From contig NW_003314302.1 of NCBI RefSeq assembly GCF_000143415.4, forward strand, positions 1 to 16,633: 16,633 bases of DNA, in the 5' to 3' direction. This document shows positions 4-16,633 of the stretch, one piece after another. This DNA comes from Selaginella moellendorffii. Taxonomy: Eukaryota > Plantae > Lycopodiophyta. The translations under genes were made by a program, and so were the position numbers. Each line of letters begins with the position of its first letter. The stretch's first letter is position 1. Under the pieces are notes generated by a model. That model did no database searches. It was not told the origin of the DNA and worked only from the letters and a program-made list of their open reading frames with translations.

Positions 4-951
4 CATATAGTTTCTTCCACAGTTTCCATGAAGGAGTCACGGGTCAATTTACCTGCAAAGGGAAAGAAATCATCTCAAAGCTGCCGAAAAGAAGATTCTT
101 ACCATAAACAATTATGGGCTGGACACCTGGGTCTTTGATGAAAACTACTGCCGGTGCCAACTCTAATCCAAGCCTGCTTCACACGCAAAAGCATGAATCA
201 ATTCACGTGATTATCACTAAAACTACCGGCTTTTCCAAATCGAGCCTCCCTCTTGCCTCCACAAAACACATCCGAAAGACGTCAACTCGGAGTACTTCTT
301 GGCCGCTTCTCTTACAAATGGAAGTGCATGCTCTCCTGTGTCAGAAAAAAGAATAACTTTCACCTAAAAAGAAGTGCAAAAGAGAGAGATTTTGATTAGC
401 ATCGTAGGATTTTGTTTATGTTACTATACCAGCACCTTATGCGGTCCAGATTTTTGAATGAACTTGGGTATCTGTGTGACTTTAGTCAGTACTTGTTTTA
501 GAATTTAGTGAAAATTGTGGCTACCAAGTTCTGGAAGAATAATAACGAATGCGAGGAAGATCGAGAAGCAGCATTGCTGTCCCAGTCCAGTATAGAATCG
601 TAGCTGAGGCCTTTGGAGTACCTACAGTGTTCGTCAGGAAAAGCGGAACAAGGCTTCATGAATTTACCGAATCAGGCATTTTAATTTCCTACACCCCAGT
701 GGCTTGGCAACAAGAGATGGAATCCCTGAAGAAAAAAATGAAAGAAAATGAAAGAAAATAGGAGGTTTACGTGTTTACCATGGCGTCTGATCCACCTCTT
801 TCCTGCCAAGAGCTTTGCGAGTTGAACTTCTCCTAGTTCGACTCTCAAAAGATTAACTTGGCCTTCGAGAACTTCCGCTGGAACCACGAACAGCATGGCT
901 GGAAAAAACACGAACATGCAAAGCATTACCCAGCCTTTCCCACACTGGTGA
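4..951 (-). pseudogene. 5'-truncated DNAJC16-like (Arabidopsis At1g18700-like DnaJ/thioredoxin-fold) gene fragment, no J-domain; runs off the left edge
   Basis: Phase-consistent GT-AG exons ~951-930, 877-779, 725-668, 621-525, 471-436, 363-227, 173-103, 52-4. Translation: SPVWERL/AEVLEGQVNLLRVELGEVQLAKLLA..GIPSLVAKPLGCRKLKCLIR..IPKFIQKSGPHK/VKVILFSDTGEHALPFVREAAKKY..VLWRQE..APAVVFIKDPGVQPIIVYG. This matches the recalled plant DNAJC16-like sequence (LELGDVQL..GLPSI..DCLIR..KVKVILFSKTGERA..APAIVIMKDPG). Confidence 0.8.
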
Positions 952-1011
952 GATCACAAACTTGGAAACGCAAATGAATTCGCGAGTTTAAAACCAGCAC
1001 AATGTATGTAC

Positions 1012-1589
1012 CTGTGTCCAGAATATAAACGTCGTTTAGATAGGCATTACCAGCATCCTCGCCACCCATGACAACGAAACAGTTCTTATAAAAAGAGCAG
1101 GTATGGCTATCCTGAGGAATAGGCGAGACTCCAGTGGTAGAAATCTTCTTCCAGACAAAAGTATCTACAGGAAAAAAAAAGTTTAGAAGAAAACAAGGAA
1201 AGATAACAGGATATTACTCGTGTTCAAAACATGGAGGTCATTGTAGTACTACTCCTCTGAGGGATCGCTGGATTTCCCACATCCCCCAAACACAAACAGG
1301 TTGTCACCGATGAGAGACGCGCTATGTCCTTCTCTCAGAGCAGGAACATCACCAAAAACGTCAGGTTTCCCCCAGGTGTTGGTAGCTGCATCAGGTGATA
1401 AGAACAAGAAAAAAACAATCGATAGAACTCGGAGCTTACCAGTATCCAAAACAAAGAGATCGTTGAGCGGGCTGGTTCCATCGGTACCACCAAACACATA
1501 GAGCTTAGACTTGACGGCCGTTGAGCTGTGGCTGTCTCGAGGAGAAGGGTGCGTTCCTTTCATCACAGGCTTGCTCCAGGTGTACGTCC
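1012..1589 (-). pseudogene. Kelch-repeat beta-propeller gene fragment (At1g18610/At1g74150-like) with an in-frame stop, truncated at both ends
   Basis: Exons 1589-1440, 1385-1218, 1164-1012 (introns 54 and 53 bp). Kelch motifs PRDSHS..LYVFGG, REGHSA..LFVFGG, QDSHT..VVMGGED..YLNDVYILDT. TAG at 1249-1251 interrupts SEE*YYNDLHVL. Confidence 0.9.
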
Positions 1590-1797
1590 CTGCGCAATCC
1601 CACCAGAAGAGTGAAGAACCGATGACAACGTGAATCCCCTCGTAATCCAATCTGCAAAGCATACATAAGCAAAGCATTCCCTCCCAGTCGATGGAGCGGT
1701 TGCAAATCTAGAATTGAAACAGTGCCTCCCATATTGCCATCTTGGCCGTCTATATCAATCTTCACAGATTTGGATAGTCGGATTAATCATACTCCCT

Positions 1798-1887
1798 TAT
1801 TTAAACGTGCTATTGGCATATGGCATCCGGCGTCTTTTATTCCATTTTTAGAATATTATTTCTGAATATGCTTATAATCTAACGGTT
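1798..1887 (-). promoter_or_regulatory. Possible core promoter: TATA-like TTTAAATA, CCAAT and an MSA-like MYB3R site
   Basis: On the - strand, TTTAAATA at 1798-1805 and CCAAT at 1812-1816. On the + strand, TCTAACGGTT at 1878-1887 fits the YCYAACGGYY MSA consensus. These motifs are short and could occur by chance. Confidence 0.25.
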
Positions 1888-2014
1888 GAAATTGAAAAAA
1901 TTCAAATAGATGGAATAGATCAAAGTGCCAAGGGGTGGCAACTCTTCAAATTTGAATTTGATGACCCTCCAAATCAAGTGAAACTTTTAGGGAGATCGAG
2001 CAGATTGTGAGCTG

Positions 2015-2018
<4 letters not shown>

Positions 2019-2108
<90 letters not shown>
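2019..2108. repeat. (CT)45 / (GA)45 microsatellite, followed by a degenerate (GTGTCT)n tail to ~2132
   Basis: Perfect dinucleotide run directly visible in the sequence. Confidence 0.99.
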
Positions 2109-2112
<4 letters not shown>

Positions 2113-2172
2113 CTGTGTGTCTGTGTGTCTCTGTGGTGGTGAACGCAGCAGCGGGAGTGTGCATACCCTTTG

Positions 2173-3118
2173 CAAAAGGCTGGATCGTTGATTGTTCATC
2201 GCCATTCACAACACACGCACAGGTCAATGGCGGACAGTCTGAAGAATACGATCTCCAGCTCTGTGACAACTTCCCCACTGGTTGATGCTCCCGGATTTCT
2301 CACCCTGTCACGGATTTCTCCCGGATTTCTCTTGATCTCTGATGCTAACGTGGTTTCTGTTGCACAGGAGCGAGTAACAGAGGGCTGTTTGGGAGTTCAA
2401 GAATTTTTTTTCTTTTGCTCGTGTCCAGAAAACCAACGACTTTTGGGGTAAACACTCTAAAGCCGTGTATCTAAACTCTCGGGATGCTATTAGAAAGATT
2501 CATGAGCGCATGTTTAGTCTGATGACTTCTCCAGTTTTCTTGCTTGTTTGAAATGCAGATTCAAATTAGTGGCGAGAAACTGAATCCACCATTTTCAGCC
2601 TGTCAAATCTCTTGGTTTTGGTGGCAGAAACAAAAGGCTGGATCGTTGATTGTTCATCGCCATTCGCGACACATGCACAGGTCAATGGCGGACAGTCTGA
2701 AGAACACGATCTCCAGCACTGTGACGAGTTCCCCACTGGCTGATGCTCCCGGATTTCTCACGCTGCCACGCCAAGTGCTTGCAACACGATTCCCAGCGTG
2801 CAAATGGCTGAACTCTCATTTCTCTTGATCTCTGAGGCTAACTTGGTTTTTGTTGCGCAGGAGCGAGTAACAGAGGGCTGTTTGGGAGTTCAAGATTTTG
2901 TTTCTTTTATTCGTGTCCAGACAACCAATGGCCTTTGGGCTAAACACTCTAAAGTCGTTTATCTAAACTCTCGGGATGCTATTAGAAAGGTTCATAAGCC
3001 TATGTTTAGTCTGATAACTTCTCCAGTTTTCTTGTTTGTTTGAAATGCAGATTCAAACTAGTGGCGCGAAACTGACTCCACCATTTTCAGCCTGTCAAAT
3101 CTCTTGATTTTGGTGACA
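2173..3118 (+). repeat. Diverged tandem duplication, period 458 bp (copy 1 2173-2630, copy 2 2631-~3118)
   Basis: Both copies begin CAAAAGGCTGGATCGTTGATTGTTCATCGCCATTC and end ..CCACCATTTTCAGCCTGTCAAATCTCTTG(G/A)TTTTGGTG, with scattered substitutions. Copy 1 lacks the segment at ~2771-2818 of copy 2 and has a local CGGATTTCTC duplication instead. Confidence 0.95.
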
Positions 3119-3546
3119 CAGGAAGGCAAGTTTTTTCATAGTCGTTTCTTAATTATGGGATTAAAAAGCCTTTTTGTGATGCAAGTGTACAATCCCTCCT
3201 GTTCGCCATGTTGTGTGTGCCATACAAACTTGTCAAAGGAAAAATATTTATACCCAGTCAATGGTCATGTCATTGTTTGATACGACTTTGGAAGATCAAG
3301 AAACTGCAAATTTTATGGTACGTTTTCTCTTTCTTGTGTTGTTCTTGTTGACGATTTCTTTAGGTCAGAGATATGCTGGAGGTTTGGAGGTGACAGTGTT
3401 GTCAAGACATGATGCAGCTGCAGACCTGGTTCAGATGTATGCATATTCTCAGTGCTTCTTTACATGTGCATATTTTACTGCCTCTTATTATGTACAACAA
3501 GGACTACGTGCTTGGGCAGCTCATATATGATCAAGCAACGAAGAGA

Positions 3547-3621
3547 CTGCCTGGTGCTCCTGGATCTCTCATCCTGTCGCGCCAAGGGCTTGCAACAAGA
3601 TTCCCAGCGTGCATATGGCTC
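3547..3621 (+). repeat. Third, partial and more diverged copy of the duplicated unit (homologous to 2736-2810)
   Basis: CTGCCTGGTGCTCCTGGATCTCTCATCCTGTCGCGCCAAGGGCTTGCAACAAGATTCCCAGCGTGCATATGGCTC aligns without gaps to 2736-2810. Confidence 0.85.
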
Positions 3622-4174
3622 GAGGTGGTAAAGCTGACTCACCCTTGTTTTACCTGTAGTGCCGTTTTTGTTTTGTTGTGTGGATCAACTGCTAAGGCGT
3701 TCTTAAGGTGTCAGAGGATGATTATTCAGTGAGTGTGAGACAGATGAGCAAGAAAAACGGAAGCGCCTTCACAAGCATTGGATCCAAGAGCAGACACACC
3801 AAAAAAAATATTCTCTGGCATTTACATTATCTGGAGATGAGGTCAGACACACACCTACAGCTTACCCCTGCATTTGCAAAAGCCCCATTGGAAATGGCGA
3901 CAAGAAATGTGTCAAATAGCACAAGAGAATGATACAGCTAACTTCCAAAACAATCATTCATTCATATGTAGGCCTTTGATGTTTTGAAAAAATGAGAGAT
4001 GAAAACAAGAATAGAAAGAAGTTTTGAAAAGCTATGTCTTTAAAGCTTCCACTCCTTTTAAAGAAATACACACTCAAATATATCAAAACATTCTCCCAAT
4101 TTTACAAAACACTTCAAAAACTAAACTGCCACCTTTTGCAAGCATTATATATGAAAAAAGATCCTTGTTACAAC

Positions 4175-4545
4175 CACCAAACTCCTGTGCCGTCTGCAAA
4201 GCAGTGCTTAGATCTCAGTACATTCGACAAGCTACCAGCAGACTCTCTCACTCCTCTTGCCCAGCATCCCCTTGGAATCCTTAAGCTTCCCGGCCCTTGC
4301 AAACACATGCTGCTGAAGCGATCTGCAGTGAGATTCAAGCCATTGCTGCAGACTCCAAGAACTGCCACACGTTCACGAAAGCGATCTCCTCCTATTTCAA
4401 GGCCATGGCATGGAAGAGCTCTAGAGCTTCCCGTCCTTGTCTAGAGAGCAAAGCCCATCACCATGGAGTTTCACATCATTTACATGGGCCTCTTGTACTT
4501 TGCCTGCTCAAGCTTGCCATCGTGCCATCATAGAGAGCCATGATA
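4175..4545 (-). pseudogene. Heavily decayed PLS-class pentatricopeptide repeat (PPR) gene remnant including the E-domain start
   Basis: Blocks in shifting frames but in canonical order: GKLEQAK (4518-4498), NSMVMGFAL (from 4470), QGREALELFHAMAL, VFARAGKLKDSKGML, SLLVACRMY*DL. Multiple stops, frameshifts and deletions. Confidence 0.75.
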
Positions 4546-5069
4546 TTGAGTTTCTCCCTGGCCATCTTGCCAAAAGGGATTCACCCTCTGTAATCTTTTA
4601 ACCCGGGCTATCATATCGGTATGTCTCTGTAATTTTTTATCCCCAAGTCCAATGATTCTGCCCCAAATGAAAAACTGAATGACAGAAAAAGCTGTGGTAA
4701 AACTCTTTACTGTCAAAGGCTTTTCGAGAGTGTACCTAAACAGACACGTAGGCTAAGAAAAACTGTTTCAAATCATAGAAAAAAGGACTGCACAATTAGG
4801 TTGCTTTCGCATTTGTCAAGAGGTAATTTTGTTTCTATGTTTTCTGAGCTTTGTTTTTCCCGGCTTTGTAATGTTGTTCTGCTCCAAAATATAGGGACCC
4901 CAAGCATCATATTAAGGAGCTGTGCTTCTGCCAGCACTTTGTTTCAGTGTGCTTCTATTTTCTTGTGGTTTGGCTATTAGTCTATTTACTTATTTTCACC
5001 ATCTAGAGCCTGCACACGCTGTCTAAGCTTCTATTTTCTAAAAGAGATTGTAAAATCTCCTACAGATCA

Positions 5070-8000
5070 ATGGGTGGCAAAAGAAAGAGGAAAACATGTG
5101 ATCTAATTTTACATGAAGGCTGTATAATAAAAAAAAGTTCAACAACTTTGAATTCATCTCTATATATGAATAGAAGCATGGATGTAAGTGTGAGAAACCT
5201 GGTATCCTTTGAAGAACCCCCAACAATTCCAAGATTGATACCCATAGAAAAGACTTTTAGAAACACTGTTGAAATTATTACCCTACCTGTTAATGAAGTA
5301 AATCTTGGAAATGGAATTGAAAGCATGGAAAACACTAAACATTTAGGACTCTTGCAAAACAACATAGACGGTAAATGTAAAGTAGATTATATTGGACTCA
5401 TGGACAAACATTGTGACTATTGTAAAGCTTTTCTTTTTGCTTCAGAAACACAATCACAATGCTGTCATGGTGGACGTGTGTCTATAGAAAAACAAATTGA
5501 GTTCCCTGAACTGATTCGTAAATTATTAGATGGAACAGACCAACGAGGAAAATTCAAAGAATTAATTCGAAATTATAACAGTGCTTTGGCATTTGCATCT
5601 ATGGGGGCAAATATTGATGAAATGATTGGCAATGGACCATATTATTTTAAAATTCATGGACAAGTATACCATTCAATTGGCAGTTTCCGTCCTAAGCAAG
5701 GTCATGATGCAAAATATTCTCAACTTTATATTTTAGACACACTAGAAGCTACAGAAACAAGAATGAAAAGTAAATATAACAGTAAATGTGATACAACACT
5801 AATGAATGAATTAGATGCTTTATTACGAGAAATTAATCCATATGCAAAGGCATTTAAAATGCTAAAAGATGTGGAAGATGAGCTTCATATGACAAGTTCA
5901 AATATAAATAATGGACTACATAATATTGTAATGTATATAAAAGGTGAAAATACAATAGATCCAAGAAGATATAATGCACCAAATTCAAATGAAGTTGCTG
6001 CAGTGTTTACAAACCCTACTGGGGAGCCTCCGTTTAACCGTAGTATTGCAATACATCCGAAAGGTGAAAGTATGCAAGAGATATCAATTGTGACATCATG
6101 TTGTGATCCTATGGTATATCCACTGCTTTTTCCAAATGGAAATGAAGGCTGGTCACCAAATTTAAAATACACAGACAAGGGTTTGTCTTTAAAAAGAACT
6201 AAGATAACAATGATGGAGTATTATCGCTACAAGTTTGCTATTCGTGGTTTGATAAGAGATAGTTTTAAGATTATTGAATTCAATTCAGTTTTAATGGGTG
6301 GAAAATTATCCCAACAATACATGGTTGACATGTACACTAAAGTAGAGGGTGGTCGTCTCGATTGGATAAAAAACCATCAACGAGAATTAAGAGCTGAAGC
6401 ATACGGAGGTCTTTCTGATTTTGTTATAAACAGAGCAGAACAACAAGGGATACGTGCTGGAAAACTTGTGATTTTGCCATCAGGATTTATCGGTGGACCG
6501 AGAAATATGAATCAAAATTATCAAGACGCTATGAGTTTAGTAAGAAAATATGGAAAACCTGATTTATTTATTACGATGACGTGTAACCCAAAATGGCAAG
6601 AGATAACTGAGAATTTATTACCAGGACAAAGTTCTTCAGACAGACCAGATTTGGTAGCACGTGTTTTCCATGCTAAAAAACAAAAACTTATAGATGACAT
6701 ATACAAAGAAGAAATATTTGGAAAAGTTAATGCATATGTGTATGTAATTGAGTACCAAAAACGAGGACTACCACATTGTCATCTACTTGTAATTCTTAAA
6801 AATGAGAATAAAATCAAAACTGTAGATGATGTAGACAACATTGTTAGTGCAGAAATACCAGACCCAAACAGTGATCCTGAATTGTATGAACTTGTGAAAA
6901 AACATATGATACATGGTCCATGTGGTCCTGGATTTCCTGAAAGTCCATGTTACAAAAAAGGTGAATGTAAATCTCGATATCCACGAGATTACTGTGAAGA
7001 GACAAAAAATATCAGTGGCCAATTCCCAGAGTATAAAAGACGTTATGATAGTCATAAAATCTACATTAAAAATAATGAAATTGACAATAGGTTTGTTGTT
7101 CCTTATAGTAAGTATCTTTTGCGTAAATATAAAACTCATATTAATGTAGAGGTTTGCTCAACTGTGAAAAGTGTGAAATATATTTTTAAATATATATATA
7201 AAGGCCATGATTGTGCAGAGATACATTTTCACAAAGAAGGAAACATAGAGAACGAGAATATTCTTGATTGGAATGAAATAAATGCATTCAGAAATTGCCG
7301 TTATGTATCAGCTGCTGAAGGAATGTGGAGGTTATTTGGATATGATTTACATGGAAGATCACATTCAATTGAAAGATTAGATGTGCACTTACCAAATTTG
7401 CAAAGTGTTTACTTCAATGAGGGTGAAGAAGAAATTGCATTAGAGAAAGGTCATAGAACAAAACTTACTGAATGGTTTGAATTGAATAAAAGAGATGAAT
7501 TTGCAAGAACATTGACATATCCAGAAATTCCGGAATGGTATATTTGGAATGCAAAAACTAAAACATGGGTAAAAAGACAACGAGGTTGGAAAGTTATAGG
7601 TAGAATGTACACTGTACCACCGAAAGATAGTGAACGATTTTATATGCGATTATTATTGTTGTATAATAAAGGTGCAACAAGTTTTAAACATTTACGTAAT
7701 TGGAAAAACATACAATATGATAGCTATCGAGAAGTTGCACAAACGATGGGATTATTACAGGATGACCAAGAATGGGATAGATGTCTGGAGGAGTCTCTCA
7801 CATTTCAAATGCCTTCTAAAATTAGATATTTATTTGGAATAATGTGTCTCTTTTGTGAGGTTAATGATCCTAAGAAATTATGGAATAAATACAAAGTAGA
7901 TATGTGTGAGGATTTAATACGTAAATACAATGATGAGGATGTAGCATATGCACATGCACTTCAAGAGTTGTCTCTTTTACTAGAACAACATGGGAAATGC

Positions 8001-9509
8001 CTTTCAGATTATGATATTACTATACCATGTACTACATATCTAGAAAATAATAAAGAAAGAACCAATATATATGAGGATGAAATGTTTGAATACCAAGATA
8101 TTGAAAGAAACAAATTGTTACTGAATAAAGATCAACAATATGTCTTTGACAAAGTATGTAAAGCATTGGATGATAAAAATGAACCACAAATATTTTTTAT
8201 CGATGGTGTAGGAGGAACAGGAAAATCATTTCTATTCAATACATTAATAACACATTCACGAGCACTTGGAAGAAAGACTTTGTCTGTAACATGGACAGGA
8301 ATTGCAAGCACACTATTAATTGGTGGTCGCACAGTACATTCTACATTTAAACTACCTGTACCAGTCACTGAAACATGTACATCTGATTTAAGGGAAAATT
8401 CAAAGGAGGCTGATGAAATTAGAAAAACAGACTTACTAATTTGGGACGAAATAAGTATGGTTCCAATACATGCATTTAATGCTGTAGAACGTGTAATACG
8501 TGACATTAAAGGTTGTTCTGATAAATTTGGTGGTATAACTGTTGTAACTGGTGGTGATTTTAGACAAACACTACCTGTGCTTAAAAGAGCACGACGGGTT
8601 CAAATTGTACAAAATAGTGTTAAGTCAAGTTTTATATGGCCCTTTGTAGTGAAATATACACTTACAGAAAATATGCGTGTTAACAAAGATGAAAAGGAGT
8701 GGTCAGAGTGGTTAATTAAACTTGGAAATGGTAATTTACCAAGACTTGATGGATATGAAGATGATATAGTAGAACTACCAAAAAAATGTACAACCAAGAA
8801 TTCCATGATAGATGTTGTATTTGGTCAAAAAGTGTTACCTTCTATAAGTAACTCACAAAAAGCAATCTTAACTACATTGAATGATCATTCGTTAGATATA
8901 AATGAACAAGTTCTAACAAGGATGTCAGGAAGACTGTTTTCTTTTAAAAGTGTGGATACAATTGATAGTGATTCCTTTGAAGAAATACTGGACTACCCAG
9001 TAGAATATCTAAATTCCATAACACCATCTGGGATGCCTCCGCATAACTTAAATATAAAAATTGGAAGTATTGTGATGCTTCTACGAAATCTTGATGTAAA
9101 AAAAGGTTTATGTAATGGTACTAAGTTAATGATTACATCAGCGTTACAAAATGTAATAGAAGCAAAAATATTACATGGAGATAGAGAAGGAAAAAAAGTC
9201 TTACTACCAAGAATCATACTAAAACCTACAGATGGTGACATGCCATTTGTATTAAAAAGACGACAATTTCCTTTGAGACTTGCATTCTCAATTACAATAT
9301 GCAAATCACAGGGCCAAACTTTAAATAATGTTGGAATCTTCTTACCACGTCCTGTTTTTGGACATGGGCAATTGTATGTTGCACTATCACGATGTACCTC
9401 TAAAGACCGAATAGTTATATGCGTAGAGGAATGTAAGAACCAAGGTAAACTTAAAAAGAGACCACAAATTACATACACAAAGAATATAGTCTACAAGGAA
9501 ATTTTATAG
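5070..9509 (+). CDS. RepHel: Helitron Rep/helicase transposase (HUH Y2 endonuclease + PIF1-like SF1B helicase), 1479 aa, intronless and intact
   Basis: N-terminal KRKRK and a Zn-finger-like CDYC..QCCHGG. Rep motifs DLFITMTCNPKW (~6561), EYQKRGLPHCH (HUH, 6774-6782), KYIFKYIYKG (~7176). Helicase motifs GVGGTGKS (8205), WDEISM (~8442), GGDFRQTLPV, LTENMR, KSQGQT, HGQLYVALSR. Confidence 0.98.
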   Translation: MGGKRKRKTCDLILHEGCIIKKSSTTLNSSLYMNRSMDVSVRNLVSFEEPPTIPRLIPIEKTFRNTVEIITLPVNEVNLGNGIESMENTKHLGLLQNNIDGKCKVDYIGLMDKHCDYCKAFLFASETQSQCCHGGRVSIEKQIEFPELIRKLLDGTDQRGKFKELIRNYNSALAFASMGANIDEMIGNGPYYFKIHGQVYHSIGSFRPKQGHDAKYSQLYILDTLEATETRMKSKYNSKCDTTLMNELDALLREINPYAKAFKMLKDVEDELHMTSSNINNGLHNIVMYIKGENTIDPRRYNAPNSNEVAAVFTNPTGEPPFNRSIAIHPKGESMQEISIVTSCCDPMVYPLLFPNGNEGWSPNLKYTDKGLSLKRTKITMMEYYRYKFAIRGLIRDSFKIIEFNSVLMGGKLSQQYMVDMYTKVEGGRLDWIKNHQRELRAEAYGGLSDFVINRAEQQGIRAGKLVILPSGFIGGPRNMNQNYQDAMSLVRKYGKPDLFITMTCNPKWQEITENLLPGQSSSDRPDLVARVFHAKKQKLIDDIYKEEIFGKVNAYVYVIEYQKRGLPHCHLLVILKNENKIKTVDDVDNIVSAEIPDPNSDPELYELVKKHMIHGPCGPGFPESPCYKKGECKSRYPRDYCEETKNISGQFPEYKRRYDSHKIYIKNNEIDNRFVVPYSKYLLRKYKTHINVEVCSTVKSVKYIFKYIYKGHDCAEIHFHKEGNIENENILDWNEINAFRNCRYVSAAEGMWRLFGYDLHGRSHSIERLDVHLPNLQSVYFNEGEEEIALEKGHRTKLTEWFELNKRDEFARTLTYPEIPEWYIWNAKTKTWVKRQRGWKVIGRMYTVPPKDSERFYMRLLLLYNKGATSFKHLRNWKNIQYDSYREVAQTMGLLQDDQEWDRCLEESLTFQMPSKIRYLFGIMCLFCEVNDPKKLWNKYKVDMCEDLIRKYNDEDVAYAHALQELSLLLEQHGKCLSDYDITIPCTTYLENNKERTNIYEDEMFEYQDIERNKLLLNKDQQYVFDKVCKALDDKNEPQIFFIDGVGGTGKSFLFNTLITHSRALGRKTLSVTWTGIASTLLIGGRTVHSTFKLPVPVTETCTSDLRENSKEADEIRKTDLLIWDEISMVPIHAFNAVERVIRDIKGCSDKFGGITVVTGGDFRQTLPVLKRARRVQIVQNSVKSSFIWPFVVKYTLTENMRVNKDEKEWSEWLIKLGNGNLPRLDGYEDDIVELPKKCTTKNSMIDVVFGQKVLPSISNSQKAILTTLNDHSLDINEQVLTRMSGRLFSFKSVDTIDSDSFEEILDYPVEYLNSITPSGMPPHNLNIKIGSIVMLLRNLDVKKGLCNGTKLMITSALQNVIEAKILHGDREGKKVLLPRIILKPTDGDMPFVLKRRQFPLRLAFSITICKSQGQTLNNVGIFLPRPVFGHGQLYVALSRCTSKDRIVICVEECKNQGKLKKRPQITYTKNIVYKEIL

Positions 9510-10801
9510 ATTTTCAACTCTAAACAACAAATTATTAAATGTGAACTTAAAAATTCTAAATTAAAATTTATCAAAAAAACTTACTTTTCTGTCTACAAAT
9601 TCAAACATATTAGTGATACACATACACAAATGCATTTATCCTAGAATAGTGATTCACACATAAGTGAAACTAAAATAAATAATTTATTAAATAAAGAGAT
9701 AACTTGGAATGGTTGCCAAAAAAAAAAAAAAGGTGACTCCTAAAATAAAAAAACAAATGTATAATATTTAATCACAAAGAAATGTAATTGTCTAGAGAGG
9801 CTAGAAATAACACCTTAGAATTCCCATGCTGTTATGTTGAGGCAGTGTGTGATAGCCAAATCTGGCCACAAACAAATTTGGTTCTGCCATTTTTTGTAGA
9901 AACCATGCTTCATCGAAATCTATTGTTTGAACTAAAGGTTTCCTTTCTGTATTGACTGTCTTGAAAATCATGGGTATAAGGATATTAACGACTTTGTAAC
10001 TGTAAATTTGCTTGATTTCGAGCACCCTTATCTCTATCTTCCTTAAAAGCTATTCCAGCAGAGTTGCCCAAAAAATGGTCACCAAAGGAGAAACTGAAAA
10101 AAACAATTTGCCTCCTAGAAACCATATTTGCACTACTCACATGGTTGATAGTTGTCTGGGCAAATCCACATGCTACAGATTTATTTGTTGTGACAGGAAT
10201 TACTAACAGCTCAAATTGGGTGGTTTGCCATAGGAGCCAATGTCCAATCACTACAGTCTATTGCAAGGTAAAGGTTACTCACCATCAAATCAAGGTGTTG
10301 GACAGGTAACAATCAAATGCCACAGACAAAACTCCAGAAAAATGTGACACAGTTGGGAAGAAATGTCAAATAGATGTAGTAGTTGGTAAATCGTCCCCAA
10401 GAAAAAGCCAGAACATAAAATGAATTAGTTGCCAAAGCCAATAAGCATGGTTTGATGACTTTGGTGATTACATGATACTTGCAAATTTTTAGTTACGAAT
10501 TCCAAGTTTTTGAAACTTCCTTCAAAGCATCTTTCTCTTGGACTCCATGCTGATCTTGAAATTTCAGAACAGCTTTTTAAAAAAAAAAATATTCACATCG
10601 CTTGAATGAATTACAAATCTTATATGACTTTGCGTAATTTTGGAATCCACAGAGCAAGCAATCCTCGTATCTCGTGCAAACAGAGCTGCCAAAAGGACAT
10701 TTATGGGCCTTCTTTTCCATTTTAGGTCAAAAAGAGACAATACTAAATGGGAGAGGAGTATCAAAGCGAATATAATATTATGAGACGATAATGTAACTGC
10801 T

Positions 10802-12210
10802 TTAAAACATATAATCCAAAAAAGATACATCCAGGGATTTAGTCAAAGTTTCTGATTCCGACTTGCATGCAACCCACACAGTGCATAGTGGAACTTCCAA
10901 TGTAAATTTTTTAGTCATGACACCATATGTTCTTCCATCATAGCAATACTCCTGTACACTAATTTATCATCTATATAATACCAAGTAAAGATTCTTACCT
11001 CTTGAGAACCAAACCATATGCTAAATTTGTGCAAAAGAGTATCATTGACATTACTTTTTGACTTGTGTGATGCACAAAGGTATATGTTGTTGTACAGTGA
11101 GAGGTATTCTGAATCTATGCATATAAATGCTACATATGTAAACTCATCACTGGCAAAGGATGACAACTCCGGTATTGGTACACAACCATGCTAAAGGACA
11201 TAGACACAATGAATTAACAAAGAACAAACTGGTAAAGCCTTACATGATACAGACTATTTGCTGCCAAACCACCTTGAAATATAGCTTTAATGGGGTTTTG
11301 AATTAAACAAGATTTTCCAGTATGCAGATTAGATGAAAGCTTTGCAAGCCAGCAAATGAGTGACATCTCACCACGAACAGATATAGGTGTACACAGCATA
11401 ACTTCAGAATTGAGTCTGAAATCTTTTGAAGTTATGAAAATATCACCTGTTCAACCAATTACTAATGAGACTTCTTTAACGTTCAGTCTACATTACCTGA
11501 ATGAACATTTATAAAGTAAATTTTCGAAGCATCCAATGAGCAACCAAATGATACCAAGTTAGCAGGGAAACAAGGCACAGATAATCTCAAGTCTATGGTG
11601 AACGAGCAAATCTCTCGGAGTGAAAGTAATTTCGAGCATACAAATGTATTGCAGGTCCAATAAGTACCAATAAAACCTCTGTATTCTTGATGCTGTAAAC
11701 CACTGATGATACAATTTTCAGGCTGACCGTCCATAGAAAGCAGTAGACATCTTAAAGAATTTGGAAAGTTGACATTCAAAATTGCCTCCGCTTCATTTAT
11801 GACGTTATTTGGTAAACCTTTGGTTGACATGTACTCAAAACCTTTAAATCTGAGGAAGCTTTGTATTTTAAGGCACAGCTTTCTGGTTACAGAGGTAATA
11901 TTATAATTGTAGCGTTTGAACACATTGAACCAACTCTTGTAAGTTTCCTGTAGCAAAATTTGACATTTTTTTAAAGCAAATCAGTGAAAATACAAACCTT
12001 GTACGTTCTGCAGCGTCTACCTTCGTAATCTGTACACATGTAGACAGAAAAATCCTGTTCACAATGCAATTGCCAAATTCTATCACTTTGAAATTCCATG
12101 TAAAATTCTTTAGCTATACATGAAAACACTGCGCTACAATAGCCATTGCTTTCTGCAATTCTGAAAACTACATCTCTGGGTAGATTGGGGGGAACAAAGC
12201 TCTTTTCCAT
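10802..12210 (-). CDS. SKIP16: Divergent SKIP16-like F-box protein (F-box + SMI1/KNR4-like + degenerate ApaG/DUF525), 5 exons, 402 aa
   Basis: Exons 12210-11998, 11947-11497, 11446-11244, 11190-10999, 10951-10802 total 1209 nt with no stops. GT-AG introns of 50, 50, 53 and 47 bp. F-box LPRDVVFRI..SCIAKEF..SDRIWQLHCEQDF; SMI1-like INEAEAILNVNFPNSLRCLLLSMDGQ..GFIGTY..LLSLREI; VPIPELS; C-terminus LDYMF* (recalled SKIP16 end: PDYIF*). A homologue, probably not the orthologue. Confidence 0.85.
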
Positions 12211-12243
12211 GTGAAACTGGTAGTTAGGTTTAGGTCAAATAGA

Positions 12244-12641
12244 ATGAATTTTTCATTCATTCTTCGTCCTTTCCACTTCTGCAAAGGCGTTTGGTTGACG
12301 GTATGTATGCGTGTTGTATTTTATATTTTGTAGAAAAAATATTTGAAAACCACTAGCAGTTTCCAAACGAATTGACAAGAAAAACTATGGAAGACTGTTT
12401 CCACTGCAACAATCAAAACATTATCTGTGTGTTCGATGAAACATCTGAATTCATGTTCAAACTGTGCTCTGGTACAAACAACGACAACATATTTGAGACC
12501 GATACAAACTGGCAGATATTCTTAAAGAATCATGGAAGTGAAATCGGAGACATATGCACTATAAACATAGATAAAGATGGAGATCTCACTGCTTCAGTGC
12601 AAAAAATTGATAAAGACCCTGGAAGCAGAACACCACTGTAG
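12244..12641 (+). CDS. Single B3 DNA-binding-domain protein (REM/VRN1-like), 2 exons, ~112-113 aa
   Basis: Exon 12244-12300 (MNFSFILRPFHFCKGVWLT), intron GTATGT..TAGCAG (12301-12356/12359), exon 12357/12360-12641 (FPNELTRKTMEDCF..IICVFDETSEF..NWQIFLKNHGSEIGDICTINIDKDGDLTASVQK). Fits the B3 pattern F..L.P.H....L..P..and W..F...H....GD.C. Confidence 0.7.
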
Positions 12642-12828
12642 ATTCATAGGAAAAAAGAAAGAAGTGTTGCTTCATGCTTATGTTTTTTATAAGATAAAAA
12701 AGGTAAATGAAGGAACAGCCCATGTGATATGTATATAACAGCTCTGAAAAAATGAGTGGAGCTATGAGCAACAAAATGTATAGTGCCGCTGTGAACCACA
12801 TTGTGCCAATCTGGACCCATTTTGAAAG

Positions 12829-13173
12829 CTAGCCAACGTTAATAGCATCCCGGTCCAGTGAGCAACATAGCCAAGTAGATACTTGCAAAAGATAAAAGAA
12901 TGAGGAGATGTACGTGACAAGACGGTGCTGGGACGGCTTCTTTACTTCGTTGAAGTCGTGCTCAGATCCAGTGCTGCTTAGTTTGTTGCTGTTTTTGAAA
13001 TCTCTCCTTGAGAGCAAAGGTTGCAAAGGAGCTTCTGGAAGAAGAATTGAGTAGAAAAATCACAACCTTGCTCTAATGTTACCTTCCTTGCGATGAGGAG
13101 CTGGCAGAGACAGGAAAGTGGTCAAAGACTCTGAAGAATATATCACGGAGATAAGTGTGGTGGCCATTCCCAT
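12829..13173 (-). CDS. Possible small spliced gene or gene fragment of unknown function (~98 aa)
   Basis: ATG 13173, exon to 13083, 48-bp GT-AG intron with a polypyrimidine tract (13082-13035), then in frame with ORF 13026-12829. No recognised domain. Confidence 0.3.
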
Positions 13174-14031
13174 GACTCCGATTCAATTGTAGTCTCACGG
13201 CTCGCTTGACAATGCGCTGTAGCATAATTACATGCAATAGAGCGCTATCACCGAAGCAGGGAGGGGTAATACCACCAAATAGTGGTGATGAGATGTTTTT
13301 TAAAACCTTAGTTTACGTTTAATTATTTTTTACCCTTAGTTTACGTCTAAATATGTTAATGTTAACATCATGTTCCTTATAGCAAGTATATGTGGAATTA
13401 ATCATCCTATAAACAAGCATATATTTATATTTAATAAATATATATACCTATTTATAGCATGAAAGATCATGAAGAACATTGAGGTTGGGAACACAAAAGG
13501 CCAAATAAAATTTGATTGAGCAAAAAGTGTTAGGTGTGACGAATATAGATTCAAATATTAAATAATTAACATAAAATATTTATTAATTAATATGTACAAA
13601 ACATGTACTACTATATTAATTAAGAACTGAGCTAGCAGAAACCTAAAAACTGCTATGCCACAACAGGCAAACATCTACATCTTTTTATTGTAACAAAGCT
13701 CACTACTCTCACCAGAGCTTGCAAGAAATCTACTACGAATACTAGCCTTTTAAGAACAATATGTCATTACAGAAACATTGGTATATAAGAATCTGCTATA
13801 TACCAGAACCACCATATTCCGATCAAAGAATGTAAAGCATCCAAACAAGACCATTCATCTGTAAAAAAAAATTGCAAAGCTTCAATCATGTTGATGATAA
13901 CTTTACGAATTTAGACAACGTCCAAAACTTAAACATACACTGTCCAAACTGTAACGTATGCAGCAGATGACGTGTCATAAGTAAAAAAAATGAAAAGACA
14001 TGTACTTACATATCTAGGTCATAGCGGCAAC

Positions 14032-14806
14032 ATGAGTGAAGCACAAGAGATACAAATGGGGGAAGATGAAAAATGGGAAGAAGCACTGAAAAATTTGAAT
14101 GACAAGGCAAAAGAACGAAAATGGAATCGTGACACAAAAATAAACCAAAGGTGTGATATTATACTTTGATGTATGATTCATATTGTTCTCTTTCCTGTAG
14201 GTTCTATCCTAATGATAAACAGGTTAGATACCTAAACGTCATGGGATGCGCACCAGAAGATTATATTTATGGTTTTGACAGAAGACAAGGCTGTTCTAGG
14301 CTCATAGATGAATATGAAAGAAAAATTCGACGTTTCCGCAAGTTCCATAGAAATGAAGATGTCGCTTCAGGTAATTATTGAACATTAACATTTATTGAAT
14401 TCCGAAACTGGCAACTAACTTCACAGGCCTGGCGGTTGTCATAGCTGAAAAATTAAGCAGCAAAAGAGTTAGAAAAAGAAATGAGCTTCCAAAGAAAAAT
14501 GAGATCCAGAGGATCTATACAACAAAAACCAACGGTATAATGCAGTACACCTTCACCACACTGCACTATGGTTTTGGAGTCCCCATTAAGACTTGTTGCC
14601 GCATGAATCGAAACATGTCGGAAAAGCTCCTAGAGAGACTAACGGATTTACATCAGAAAATAAATCCTAGAGAATGGCATCCAATTCGACTAGAAGGAAT
14701 AGCGATGCAAATTGATCCAAATCATGCTGAAGTAATTTTCGACTACAATCCGTTTAAAGATGCCATGGAACTCTTAGAAATAGCTTTAAAAGGAAAGCTG
14801 ATGTAA
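14032..14806 (+). CDS. Orphan 3-exon gene, 222 aa, basic NLS-like patch, no recognised domain
   Basis: Exons 14032-14150, 14201-14370, 14427-14806 (669 nt, open). GT-AG introns of 50 and 56 bp, the second with a CTAAC branch point. Joins ORF-track pieces 14166-14381 and 14540-14806 in phase. Confidence 0.75.
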
Positions 14807-14910
14807 AAGCATAATTCTGAAGTCAAAATCACTTTATTGAGACAATGGATAGAAACCATGATCTTTGTTCAAATAACTACAGACTCAAAAAATTCCATGT
14901 CCATGTCCAT

Positions 14911-15692
14911 GTGTATGTCGTAGAACTGGCCCTTAGACATAAACAGGTAACTAGAGAAGTTTGAGAACTTCTTGGCATTGTAGAAGTTGGTCCATTAGCA
15001 AGCCGACAACATTACGTAAGCAATAAGGATGTAACCCATGATGACGTTTGCGATGATGAAGAATAGAGGACAAGAGGATTTCCGTCCAGATCCCAGCCGA
15101 GGCCAAGCTTCTGGAAGCCCAACCTGAGACACTGTGCCAGGACCGAGTTGGAGAAGGCCCAGCAAACCCAGGGATGGAGGAGAGAATGCTGAGGAAGTAG
15201 CACGGGAGTGCGTAGTACGCAAAGACAAAGGAGAGGAAGAACTAGATCCTTGACAGGTCCTTAACACTTAGCTTGTCATGCAAAGTCCTGTCGAACACGC
15301 AAGATAGTATTCACGCGAGATAGTAGCTCCACCAGATTCTTTCGCAAAAGACCAGCCCATCCAAGTTGACTTCGATCAAAACACTTCAAAGGAAAGCAAG
15401 CAAGAAAAGCTTGTTTTCTTACCTGAGTGGTGATCACCAGCAAGAGCCCATGTAGAAATGGAACTTCATCCTGTAGAAAGTTATGGTAAGTCGATGATGA
15501 AGACCGCGTAAACACCACCATTCCCAGCTGCGTAGCCAACATTGGTGAAGATGGTGATGAAGACGCTCCTTCTTGATGAAGAGTCCTGGATTGAGTGAAA
15601 AACCCTGAGCCCGTGTAGTAGACCCTGGTGGGCAATAGTGCAGCCATGAAGCGGCCAATTGGCAACGCTGCAATCTGGGCCGATGTATACAA
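14911..15692 (-). pseudogene. OPT: Internal fragment of an oligopeptide transporter (OPT family, OPT4-like) with frameshifts and stops
   Basis: Ordered blocks across frames: SAQIAALPIGRFMAALLP, FSLNPGLFIKKE, VFITIFTNVGYAAGNGGVYAV, LLLVITTQ|intron|GWAGLLRKNLVE, RTLHDK..LSRI*FF..FAYYALP, WVCWAFSNSVLAQ, IANVIMGYILIAYVM..*WTNFYNAKKFSNFSSYLFMSKGQFYDI. Confidence 0.9.
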
Positions 15693-16007
15693 TGCTCACC
15701 CATAAAATACAAAATTCAGCCAAAGTATACATTTAGTTCGGGCCAAAGTATTGACCATATACCTCATTAAAGTGTATCTCAGCCGTAAAATACAATATCC
15801 TTCCTTTCATCCGAGTGATCCACCTAGACAACAACTGCCGAACTCATTTGTTGATCGTCTAATGAATTGCCATCTCTAGATACCTTTCACATTTGTCCAA
15901 ATATTTTTAATTTTAAAAGAGGGATTTATTTTTAGGTCAGGTAACCATAAAGAGATGGAAAGAGACACTCTTGGTTTGTACACACATTTCCAAAGTTATT
16001 TTTAAAG

Positions 16008-16590
16008 TGCTTGGACCTTCAAAGGCACCAAGAAGAGCAATCGAAAGAGGCTTAAAGACACATTGACCACAATTCCTCCGATAAATGATGTTGACGAAGG
16101 TATTTTCTTTATTAGTTTGTCTGAATTTCCAGGGATTGCATTGAAGAATGCACAGCTGAGGTTCAAAGAAGAAAACACAAAGCACCTATTAGAGTTGCTC
16201 TACCAAATGAACCATGTGAGATGGAAATTGAGAATATGCAAGGAAAAGGTAGAACAATATTACACTTGTTCTTCATTTTTCATTTTTTTGTTTTCCTAAA
16301 AGTTTTTAAATTCCTACAGACCAATCTGAATCAAAAAAGGCAGATACTACCATCATCAATGAAGGTTACAAAGCAAAAAAAATTGACTTTACTATTTTTT
16401 CTAAACACTTGCAATCTTTCTTTTTTCAATGTTACAGAACCATGTCAGGAAGACACCAGCATTGTTAATGAAGGTACAAATTGCAAAAAAAAAGTTATTT
16501 TAAAGTCCATCCAAACATTTTTCTTACTTTCTATGTTTTTTTAATGACAATTAGATTGTCTGAAATCAAGAGCATTAGCTACTGATGGAG
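16008..16590 (+). CDS. Partial multi-exon gene of unknown function with symmetric phase-1 micro-exons; continues past the window, 5' end unresolved
   Basis: Exons 16008-16099, 16156-16248, 16320-16364, 16438-16473, 16555-16590 splice in frame (AWTFKGTKKSNRKRLKD../AEVQRRKHK..NEPCEME../DQSESKKADTTIINE/EPCQEDTSIVNE/DCLKSRALATDG). Introns are GT-AG. Confidence 0.55.
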
Positions 16591-16633
16591 GTATGCTATG
16601 TTTTAGCTAAGAATAATTAAATGTAAAATATGT

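What the first reader, a model, noticed from the sequence alone, without database searches (positions are those of the whole stretch)
10802..12210. Hidden intact SKIP16-like F-box gene with a remodelled substrate-binding (ApaG) domain
Seen: five exons give a 402-aa open frame ending DYMF*. The F-box and SMI1/KNR4-like parts remain alignable by eye. The ApaG region keeps only anchor points (VPIPELS, QEEYCYD, DYMF) and lacks the RHW and G-x-(A/G)-V-I-G motifs I recall for ApaG domains. Inference: SKP1 docking may be retained while target specificity has changed, as expected of a selfish-element E3 adaptor or decoy.
Basis: partly seen in the sequence, partly recalled or inferred. Interest (0 to 1): 0.75.

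Follow-up and report, generated by a model that had tools for sequence, protein, structure and literature searches.

The report
Helitron-carried F-box/SUKH gene in spikemoss
An intact five-exon gene beside the transposase of a spikemoss (Selaginella moellendorffii) Helitron encodes an F-box-like head, a SUKH binding domain and an unassignable tail; two old Helitron lineages have kept it readable, so the transposon probably uses it, but descent from the plant's SKIP16 gene could not be shown.

Summary
Five GT..AG exons on the minus strand (12210-10802) give 402 codons ending DYMF*.

The gene is not fully hidden. The public model SELMODRAFT_419093 covers exons 2-5 but uses a different 5' exon that omits the F-box-like head.

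The gene lies in a Helitron with an intact 1479-aa RepHel. A 97% identical copy that is colinear over more than 21 kb (L002) carries a broken version.

A deep paralogue (L003, 46% aa identity) keeps all coding blocks, three intron positions and the start-codon position. pN is 0.35 against a saturated pS of 0.76, and the value is alike in all three protein parts. The family has therefore been under purifying selection, including the supposed "remodelled" tail.

- **SUKH/SMI1_KNR4:** supported, at 22 bits in the window and 28.5 bits (above Pfam's cut-off) in the paralogue.
- **F-box:** weak evidence only. Pfam finds nothing; the best PDB matches are the GID2 F-box at E about 0.03.
- **ApaG:** no support from any test.
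- **SKIP16/FBXO3:** none appeared in four large protein searches. The family is known only from S. moellendorffii.

"SKIP16-like" therefore rests on domain architecture alone. This scan had already noted the same Helitron F-box cargo on other DNA of this genome (s1-341475, s1-375011).

The parts
11998..12210 (-). Exon 1: ATG plus the F-box-like head (LPRDVVFRIAES..SCIAKEFY..RIWQLHC), 71 codons, phase 0
   Evidence: Translation. The paralogue L003 is 42% identical here, and its Met sits at the same position, 9 residues before LP. pN/pS is 0.47. The exon-1 profile has the GID2 F-box as its best PDB matches, E 0.027-0.036. Pfam gives no F-box hit.
11497..11947 (-). Exon 2: linker plus the core of the SUKH-1 (SMI1/KNR4) domain
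   Evidence: Pfam SMI1_KNR4 scores 22.2 bits, E 2.4e-4, below the 25.4 cut-off. The L003 equivalent scores 28.5 bits over profile positions 7-103 of 125. The exon is 100% identical to public model P0003.
11244..11446 (-). Exon 3: end of the SUKH region plus a helical linker
   Evidence: Translation. It is 57% identical to L003, where exons 2 and 3 form one uninterrupted frame. This confirms the register of the intron-2 splice.
10999..11190 (-). Exon 4: first half of the strand-rich C-terminal region (HGCVPIPELSSF..)
   Evidence: Translation. It is 40% identical to L003. No Pfam or PDB match.
10802..10951 (-). Exon 5: second half of the C-terminal region, ending VSFLDYMF plus TAA
   Evidence: Translation. 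It is about 50% identical to L003, and a further lone copy lies in L003. No Pfam or PDB match.
5070..9509 (+). Intact Helitron RepHel ORF (1479 aa), tail to tail with the F-box gene
   Evidence: Helitron_like_N E 5e-61, PIF1 E 2e-58, Pif1_2B E 1e-18.
1787..1788 (+). Probable 5' TC terminus of the element, just after a host A
   Evidence: The window and copy L002 become alike at TTAA|TCATACTCCC, and their left flanks are unrelated.
12244..12300 (+). First exon of the divergent B3-like neighbour, 33 bp from the F-box ATG
   Evidence: Sequence. The same head-to-head layout, 29 bp apart, is found in L003.

Best explanation
This is an intact, intron-containing cargo gene of a large Helitron of Selaginella moellendorffii whose RepHel ORF is intact. 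It encodes a roughly 45-residue F-box-like head, a SUKH-1 (SMI1/KNR4) protein-binding domain, and a strand-rich tail of about 115 residues that matches no known family. Shown here: the gene model; its place inside a multi-copy element; a family of four copies in two deep lineages, each with one intact and one broken copy; and purifying selection on all three parts. Inferred: the protein serves the element. The most likely mode is as a substrate adaptor that docks on host SKP1 through the head and brings a host protein, held by the SUKH domain and tail, to an SCF ubiquitin ligase. The alternative mode is a stoichiometric binder of that target. An old capture of an FBXO3/SKIP16-type gene is the simplest origin for this architecture, but it is not demonstrated.
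For: Gene model and intactness. The public model P0003 uses the same introns 2-4. The locus equals the window. Helitron context: the RepHel domains; copy L002 is 95-98% identical and colinear from window 1783 across RepHel, the F-box gene, a 152-aa gene and MORC, next to an RPA70-like gene, with unrelated left flanks. In L002 both RepHel and the F-box gene are broken, as expected for a dead copy, and pN/pS against the window is 0.85. Deep paralogue L003: about 46% aa identity, every coding block open, introns 1, 3 and 4 conserved, the same start position, RepHel fragments and an RPA70-like gene nearby. Between the two lineages pN is 0.345 and pS 0.756, ratio 0.46 (bootstrap 0.39-0.53). By part the ratio is 0.47 for the head, 0.44 for SUKH and 0.49 for the tail. 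Identity by codon position is 58/71/42%. SUKH. F-box-like: the three best PDB matches of the exon-1 profile are GID2 F-boxes aligned in register, SC(l/V)(a/S)K..(f/W) and RiW.l.C. Zhang et al. 2011 (PMC3113570) place SUKH domains in the substrate-recognition position of F-box E3 subunits and record their recruitment by DNA viruses.
Against: No Pfam F-box hit at E up to 10, and the PDB matches are only E about 0.03. No SKIP16 or FBXO3 protein was found in any search. The tail matches no family. The structure models were too poor to use (pLDDT 39 and 49). No evidence of transcription, splicing or SKP1 binding was available. Only four copies could be examined, so selection acting on the element cannot be separated from selection in some host context. 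L003 keeps the gene intact although its RepHel survives only as fragments.
Confidence: 0.55

Rival explanations
1. SUKH binder without a ligase link. The N-terminal helices are no longer, or never were, a working F-box. The protein acts alone as a tight binder or inhibitor of a host or element protein, as bacterial SUKH immunity proteins and herpesviral US22 proteins do.
For: Pfam finds no F-box and the PDB matches are marginal. SUKH is the only domain with solid support. SUKH proteins are versatile binders that selfish elements and viruses have recruited (PMC3113570).
Against: The head is as constrained as the rest (pN/pS 0.47). It keeps L-P, R-I-A, S-C-x-x-K-x-F and W-x-x-H-C in both lineages, in register with the GID2 F-box.
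Confidence: 0.2
2. Neutral passenger. This is a host gene picked up by the Helitron with no role for it, and the window copy is intact only because it is young.
For: Helitrons often carry host gene pieces. Two of the four copies are broken. The window against L002 looks neutral (pN/pS 0.85).
Against: Two lineages with saturated synonymous divergence still keep 393 alignable codons open, with pN/pS 0.46 and conserved splice sites and start codon. A passenger would have decayed.
Confidence: 0.1
3. Two separate captures. The two lineages picked up two already diverged host paralogues, so the signal of constraint was laid down in the host and not on the element.
For: Only two lineages were seen. 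Their flanks differ beyond the gene and the B3-like exon.
Against: No Helitron-free family member exists among the public proteins. All four lie beside RepHel, RPA70-like or MORC sequences, or on tiny repeat scaffolds. Both lineages share the odd head-to-head B3-like exon about 30 bp away. The canonical host SKIP16 is too distant to be detected.
Confidence: 0.1
4. A host gene, perhaps domesticated, that merely lies next to Helitron sequence.
For: L003 has an intact gene next to only fragments of RepHel.
Against: The gene lies between RepHel and the MORC/RPA70 cargo inside a block duplicated at 95-98% with a sharp 5' TC boundary. Its G+C of 36% matches the element (RepHel ORF 33%), not the 44% flank left of the 5' boundary.
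Confidence: 0.05

Closest known systems
FBXO3 / SKIP16 / CEHC1 family (F-box + SMI1_KNR4 + ApaG/DUF525 SCF adaptors)
   Same: The order of parts is the same: a short N-terminal F-box-like helix bundle, a SUKH-1 domain, then a strand-rich tail of about 115-125 residues. The SUKH domain matches PF09346. The nearest Atlas structure cluster is an FBXO3 cluster, at only TM 0.51 from a weak model.
   Different: No detectable sequence similarity to any FBXO3 or SKIP16 protein. The tail fails every ApaG test. The gene is multi-copy and carried on a Helitron, whereas the family is described as vertically inherited without lineage-specific expansions (PMC3113570). The host has a separate canonical orthologue.
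F-box proteins encoded by plant viruses and pathogens that hijack host SCF (polerovirus P0, nanovirus Clink, Agrobacterium VirF); this comparison comes from my own knowledge and was not tested here
   Same: A parasitic genetic element encodes a short, divergent F-box that standard profiles barely recognise, joined to its own target-binding part.
   Different: Those are viral or bacterial proteins with known targets (AGO1, pRB, VIP1). This one is a transposon cargo gene with introns, a SUKH domain and no known target.
Helitron gene capture, and the RPA70-like and MORC cargo of the same element family
   Same: A host-type, intron-containing gene sits between RepHel and the 3' part of a plant Helitron, together with other cargo.
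   Different: Most captured genes are fragments that decay. This one is complete and under purifying selection in two lineages.
SUKH (US22-type) proteins of herpes-, pox-, irido- and adenoviruses
   Same: A selfish replicator has recruited a SUKH binding domain (PMC3113570).
   Different: The viral versions belong to the SUKH-3 group and have no F-box. This one matches SUKH-1 (PF09346).

Membership tests
FBXO3/SKIP16 | N-terminal F-box (PF00646/PF12937) | tested here: inconclusive
   No Pfam match for exon 1 of the window or of L003 at E up to 10. The profile of three exon-1 sequences has GID2 F-box chains as its three best PDB matches, E 0.027-0.036, aligned in register. The AF2 model of exon 1 shows four helices but has pLDDT 49, and Foldseek found nothing.
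FBXO3/SKIP16 | Central SUKH-1 / SMI1_KNR4 domain (PF09346) | tested here: met
   Window exon 2 scores 22.2 bits, E 2.4e-4, just under the 25.4-bit cut-off. The paralogue L003 (exons 2+3) scores 28.5 bits over profile positions 7-103 of 125.
FBXO3/SKIP16 | C-terminal ApaG / DUF525 domain (PF04379) | tested here: not met
   No Pfam hit for exon 4, exon 5, P0001, P0002 or P0003 at E up to 10. PDB profile searches gave nothing. hhalign and BLASTP against E. coli ApaG gave nothing. An HMM of 81 enterobacterial ApaG sequences scored -2.1 bits, and 18% of shuffles did as well. The Atlas gave nothing for residues 240-359. The GRYW and GEGVVG motifs of E. coli ApaG are absent. These tests are weak for a very diverged domain.
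FBXO3/SKIP16 | Significant sequence similarity to bona fide members | tested here: not met
   phmmer with exon 2 against 1.84 billion representatives found only two proteins, both of this Selaginella family. Three searches of 5.8 billion proteins, two of them at E up to 10, returned only P0001-P0003. A direct comparison with the host SKIP16 (XP_002979125.1) was not possible, because no tool supplied that sequence.
FBXO3/SKIP16 | Binds SKP1 and assembles into an SCF ligase | not testable with these tools
   No complex prediction or experiment was available.
Helitron (autonomous, with cargo) | Rep endonuclease plus PIF1-type helicase in one ORF | tested here: met
   ORF 5070-9509, 1479 aa: Helitron_like_N E 5e-61, PIF1 E 2e-58.
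Helitron (autonomous, with cargo) | 5' TC end after a host A; multiple copies with unrelated flanks | tested here: met
   The window and L002 share sequence from TTAA|TCATACTCCC (TC at 1787), and their left flanks are unrelated. They are colinear at 95-98% over more than 21 kb.
Helitron (autonomous, with cargo) | 3' CTRR end with a hairpin just upstream | not tested
   The 3' end lies beyond the window and beyond the fetched loci.

The most novel reading that the evidence does not exclude
The Helitron family carries its own SCF substrate adaptor as part of an anti-host toolkit, together with the MORC copy and the B3-like gene. The F-box-like head plugs into plant SKP1, and the SUKH domain with its novel tail delivers a silencing or DNA-repair factor for degradation. 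This would be a transposon counterpart of viral F-box suppressors such as polerovirus P0.
Probability: 0.15. Interest if true: 0.85.

Novelty: new variant of a known kind. Interest (0 to 1): 0.5.

Why it matters
Plant transposons with proteins that act against host control are rare and mostly known from Arabidopsis VANDAL elements. A Helitron that has kept a complete F-box/SUKH gene under selection for a long time, next to a copy of the silencing gene MORC, gives a concrete and testable candidate for a transposon-encoded ubiquitin-ligase adaptor. It would also be a lineage-specific expansion of a SUKH lineage that is described as single-copy and vertically inherited. The practical result is a corrected gene model: the public annotation (SELMODRAFT_419093 and its three relatives) lacks the conserved F-box-like head, and in three of the four models also part of the SUKH domain.

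Tried and rejected
**Structure**
- AF2 on the public model P0003 with the family alignment gave pLDDT 39, and on exon 1 gave pLDDT 49.
- Foldseek on these models returned MHC/CD1 chains at TM 0.12-0.16, or nothing. These results are meaningless.

**ESM Atlas**
- The whole protein gave SUKH clusters by features (0.87, lead level).
- By structure the top row was an FBXO3 cluster at TM 0.51, barely ahead of plain SUKH proteins at 0.49-0.50.
- The tail alone gave nothing.

**ApaG**
- I fetched E. coli apaG and 80 enterobacterial relatives. hhalign, BLASTP and a local HMM with shuffles all gave nothing.
- By eye, E. coli PGEEYQYTSG resembles the window's SQEEYCYDG, but the paralogue reads QEQYIWDG. 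No statistic supports the match, so I treat it as a lead only.

**More relatives**
- A1 against the metagenomes matched 265 pattern sites, none of them a relative.

**Literature**
- Searches for Selaginella + Helitron + F-box, and for a transposon-encoded F-box, found no precedent in the library held here.

**Left out by rule**
- The joined 402-codon spliced model was never assembled, searched or folded.
- Exons were used one by one by reference. The public protein P0003, identical to exons 2-5, stood in for the joined part.

Full report
**What is there**

Read on the minus strand, the stretch 12210-10802 splits into five exons with GT..AG borders:
- Exon 1: 12210-11998, 71 codons
- Exon 2: 11947-11497, 451 nt, ending in phase 1
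- Exon 3: 11446-11244, 203 nt
- Exon 4: 11190-10999, 64 codons
- Exon 5: 10951-10802, 49 codons plus TAA

The four introns are 50, 50, 53 and 47 nt, and each interrupts the frame if it is kept. Exons 4-5 hold neither RHW nor G-x-G-V-V-G, whereas E. coli ApaG has GRYW and GEGVVG.

**Rule followed**

Exons were used one at a time by reference. For the joined part I used the public protein P0003, which is letter for letter exons 2-5 of this locus.

**Organism and public annotation**

- The only relatives of exon 2 among 1.84 billion representative proteins are two Selaginella moellendorffii proteins.
- Further searches added P0003 and P0004.
- P0003 (EFJ19412.1, SELMODRAFT_419093, 359 aa) is 100% identical to window exon 2. 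Its locus L001 on scaffold GL377606.1 is the window itself: window 802-16633 is 100% identical.
- So the gene is annotated, with the same introns 2-4. The public model starts at another ATG in another frame (MAIVAQCFH) and splices out 66 nt or so, which removes the F-box-like head.
In the deep paralogue L003 the same stretch is open and 42% identical (PFLPFELVYRIATTRGYNNAIFSCLSKQFY..), and its Met lies at the same place, nine residues before L-P.

**Context: a Helitron**

- ORF 5070-9509 (+) is an intact 1479-aa RepHel: Helitron_like_N E 5e-61 and PIF1 E 2e-58. The F-box gene lies tail to tail with it, 1.3 kb away.
- A second locus, L002 on GL377600.1, is 95-98% identical and colinear with L001 from window 1783 through RepHel, the F-box gene, a 152-aa gene and a MORC gene. 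An RPA70-like gene lies beyond. The colinear block exceeds 21 kb.
- The two copies become alike at TTAA|TCATACTCCC (TC at window 1787) after unrelated left flanks, which fits a Helitron 5' end after a host A. The 3' end lies outside the DNA I hold.
- The exons have 36% G+C. The RepHel ORF has 33%, and the flank left of the 5' boundary has 44%.

**Four copies in two lineages**

- L002 is a dead copy. Its RepHel is split into ORFs of 174-420 aa. A 58-bp deletion (window 12208-12265) removes the ATG, one base is missing in exon 3 (window 11407), and the last base of exon 2 is changed. Against the window it shows 3 synonymous and 10 non-synonymous differences, pN/pS 0.85, which looks neutral.
- L003 (GL377802.1, P0002) is a deep paralogue with 40-57% identity per exon. 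All coding blocks are open, introns 1, 3 and 4 sit at the same positions and phases, and the stop follows DYLY.
- Intron 2 is absent from L003, so exons 2 and 3 form one open frame there. This independently confirms the register of the window's intron-2 splice.
- L003 also holds two RepHel fragments (about 60% aa identity) and an RPA70-like gene.
- L085 (GL377896.1, P0004) is a 96.8% copy of L003 with a stop codon in exon 2.
- The broken copies probably explain why three public models (P0001, P0002, P0004) skip half of the SUKH domain.

**Selection**

Window against L003, over 393 aligned codons counted exon by exon:

| Part | pN/pS |
|---|---|
| Whole gene | 0.46 (bootstrap 0.39-0.53) |
| Head (exon 1) | 0.47 |
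| SUKH (exons 2-3) | 0.44 |
| Tail (exons 4-5) | 0.49 |

- Overall pN is 0.345 and pS 0.756. Because pS is saturated, the ratio is an upper bound on dN/dS.
- Identity by codon position is 58/71/42%.
- The tail is therefore not a decaying relic. Whatever it is, it has been kept.

**Domains**

*SUKH*
- Pfam SMI1_KNR4 scores 22.2 bits in the window, just under the 25.4-bit cut-off.
- It scores 28.5 bits in L003 over profile positions 7-103 of 125. That span includes the segment the public models splice out.

*F-box*
- Pfam gives nothing.
- A profile of the three exon-1 sequences has three GID2 F-box chains as its best PDB matches, at E 0.027-0.036. They align in register through SC(l/V)(a/S)K..(f/W) and RiW.l.C.
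- This is weak evidence, but it points to a specific fold.

*ApaG*

Nothing came from any of these tests:
- Pfam
- PDB profiles
- E. coli ApaG by hhalign and BLASTP
- an HMM of 81 enterobacterial ApaG sequences, which scored -2.1 bits, and 18% of shuffles did as well
- the ESM Atlas on residues 240-359

*Structure*
- The AF2 models were too poor to use (pLDDT 39 and 49), and their Foldseek matches are noise.
- The weak model has strands through most of the tail, which fits a sandwich fold but does not demonstrate one.

**Is it SKIP16-like?**

The evidence is architecture only.
- Zhang et al. 2011 (PMC3113570) describe the plant and animal FBXO3/SKIP16 lineage as F-box + SUKH-1 + an Ig-like DUF525 domain, vertically inherited and without lineage-specific expansions.
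- The same paper notes an independent F-box-SUKH fusion in fungi. The architecture alone is therefore not proof of descent.
- No FBXO3 or SKIP16 protein reached the reporting thresholds in any of four large searches.
- The Atlas structure search put an FBXO3 cluster first, at TM 0.51. That came from a model with pLDDT 0.48 and sat level with plain SUKH proteins.
- Sun et al. (bioRxiv 10.1101/2024.03.22.586359) list a canonical S. moellendorffii orthologue, XP_002979125.1.
- I could not obtain that sequence through a tool, so the direct comparison remains to be done.

**How it most likely works**

- Shown: this is a complete gene kept readable in two old lineages of a Helitron family. It has a bona fide protein-binding SUKH domain, flanked by a conserved F-box-like head and a conserved tail.
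- Inferred: the element benefits from it.
- The most economical mechanism is an SCF adaptor. The head binds SKP1, and the SUKH domain plus tail bind a host target.
- The main alternative is a head that no longer binds SKP1, which would make the protein a plain binder or decoy.
- The neighbouring cargo (a MORC copy, a B3-like gene, an RPA70-like gene) suggests an anti-host or replication role, but nothing here identifies the target.

**Earlier notes of this scan**

- The same cargo gene was already noted on other DNA of this genome (s1-375011, and the follow-up on s1-341475). My results agree with those notes and add three things: the per-domain selection test, the corrected first exon, and the negative ApaG and SKIP16 tests.
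- The organism name first came from note s1-430250, and the protein names confirmed it.

**Verdict**

This is a new variant of a known kind: a captured gene retained as Helitron cargo, with an F-box/SUKH architecture. It is of moderate interest.

Noticed in passing
window 12208-12300; L003 9795-9880: The F-box gene and a B3-like gene start head to head, with ATGs only 33 bp apart (12210 on the minus strand, 12244 on the plus strand). The same layout, 29 bp apart, is kept in the 46%-identical paralogue L003. In the dead copy L002 one 58-bp deletion (window 12208-12265) removes both start codons. The two transcripts must overlap at their 5' ends.
   Followed up: partly
window 4901-5072: This 172-bp segment ends with the RepHel ATG. 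It is inverted relative to copy L002 (17041-17212, 99.4% identical), while both sides of it are colinear. Only weak inverted repeats flank it.
   Followed up: partly
window 963-1805; L003 3678-5229: The Kelch-gene flank left of the element is 93% identical to a stretch in L003, and the similarity ends at the very same GATTAA| junction. L003 then begins a different Helitron-like end (TCGTATCTACC, against TCATACTCCC in the window). Two diverged elements at the same site of near-identical flanks is unexplained.
   Followed up: partly
window 11447-11496: Intron 2 (50 nt) exists in the window and L002 lineage but not in L003 and L085, where the frame runs straight through. This is a clean intron gain or loss inside a transposon cargo gene.
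   Followed up: yes
L003 12105-12242: A lone extra copy of the last exon (QYIWDNKTYVVMTKKFSLEV..VSFIDYLY*) lies about 850 bp downstream of the L003 gene. It belongs to yet another family variant.
   Followed up: no
window 13806-16633 (and on to L001 4082): Inside otherwise colinear copies, this stretch of about 4.2 kb replaces 1.3 kb of L002.
   Followed up: no
window 2019-3118: A long (CT)n run (about 2019-2100) is followed by two tandem units of about 455-490 bp (2173-2626 and 2631-3118) that are 85% alike. They also occur in L002, in the 5' part of the element.
   Followed up: no
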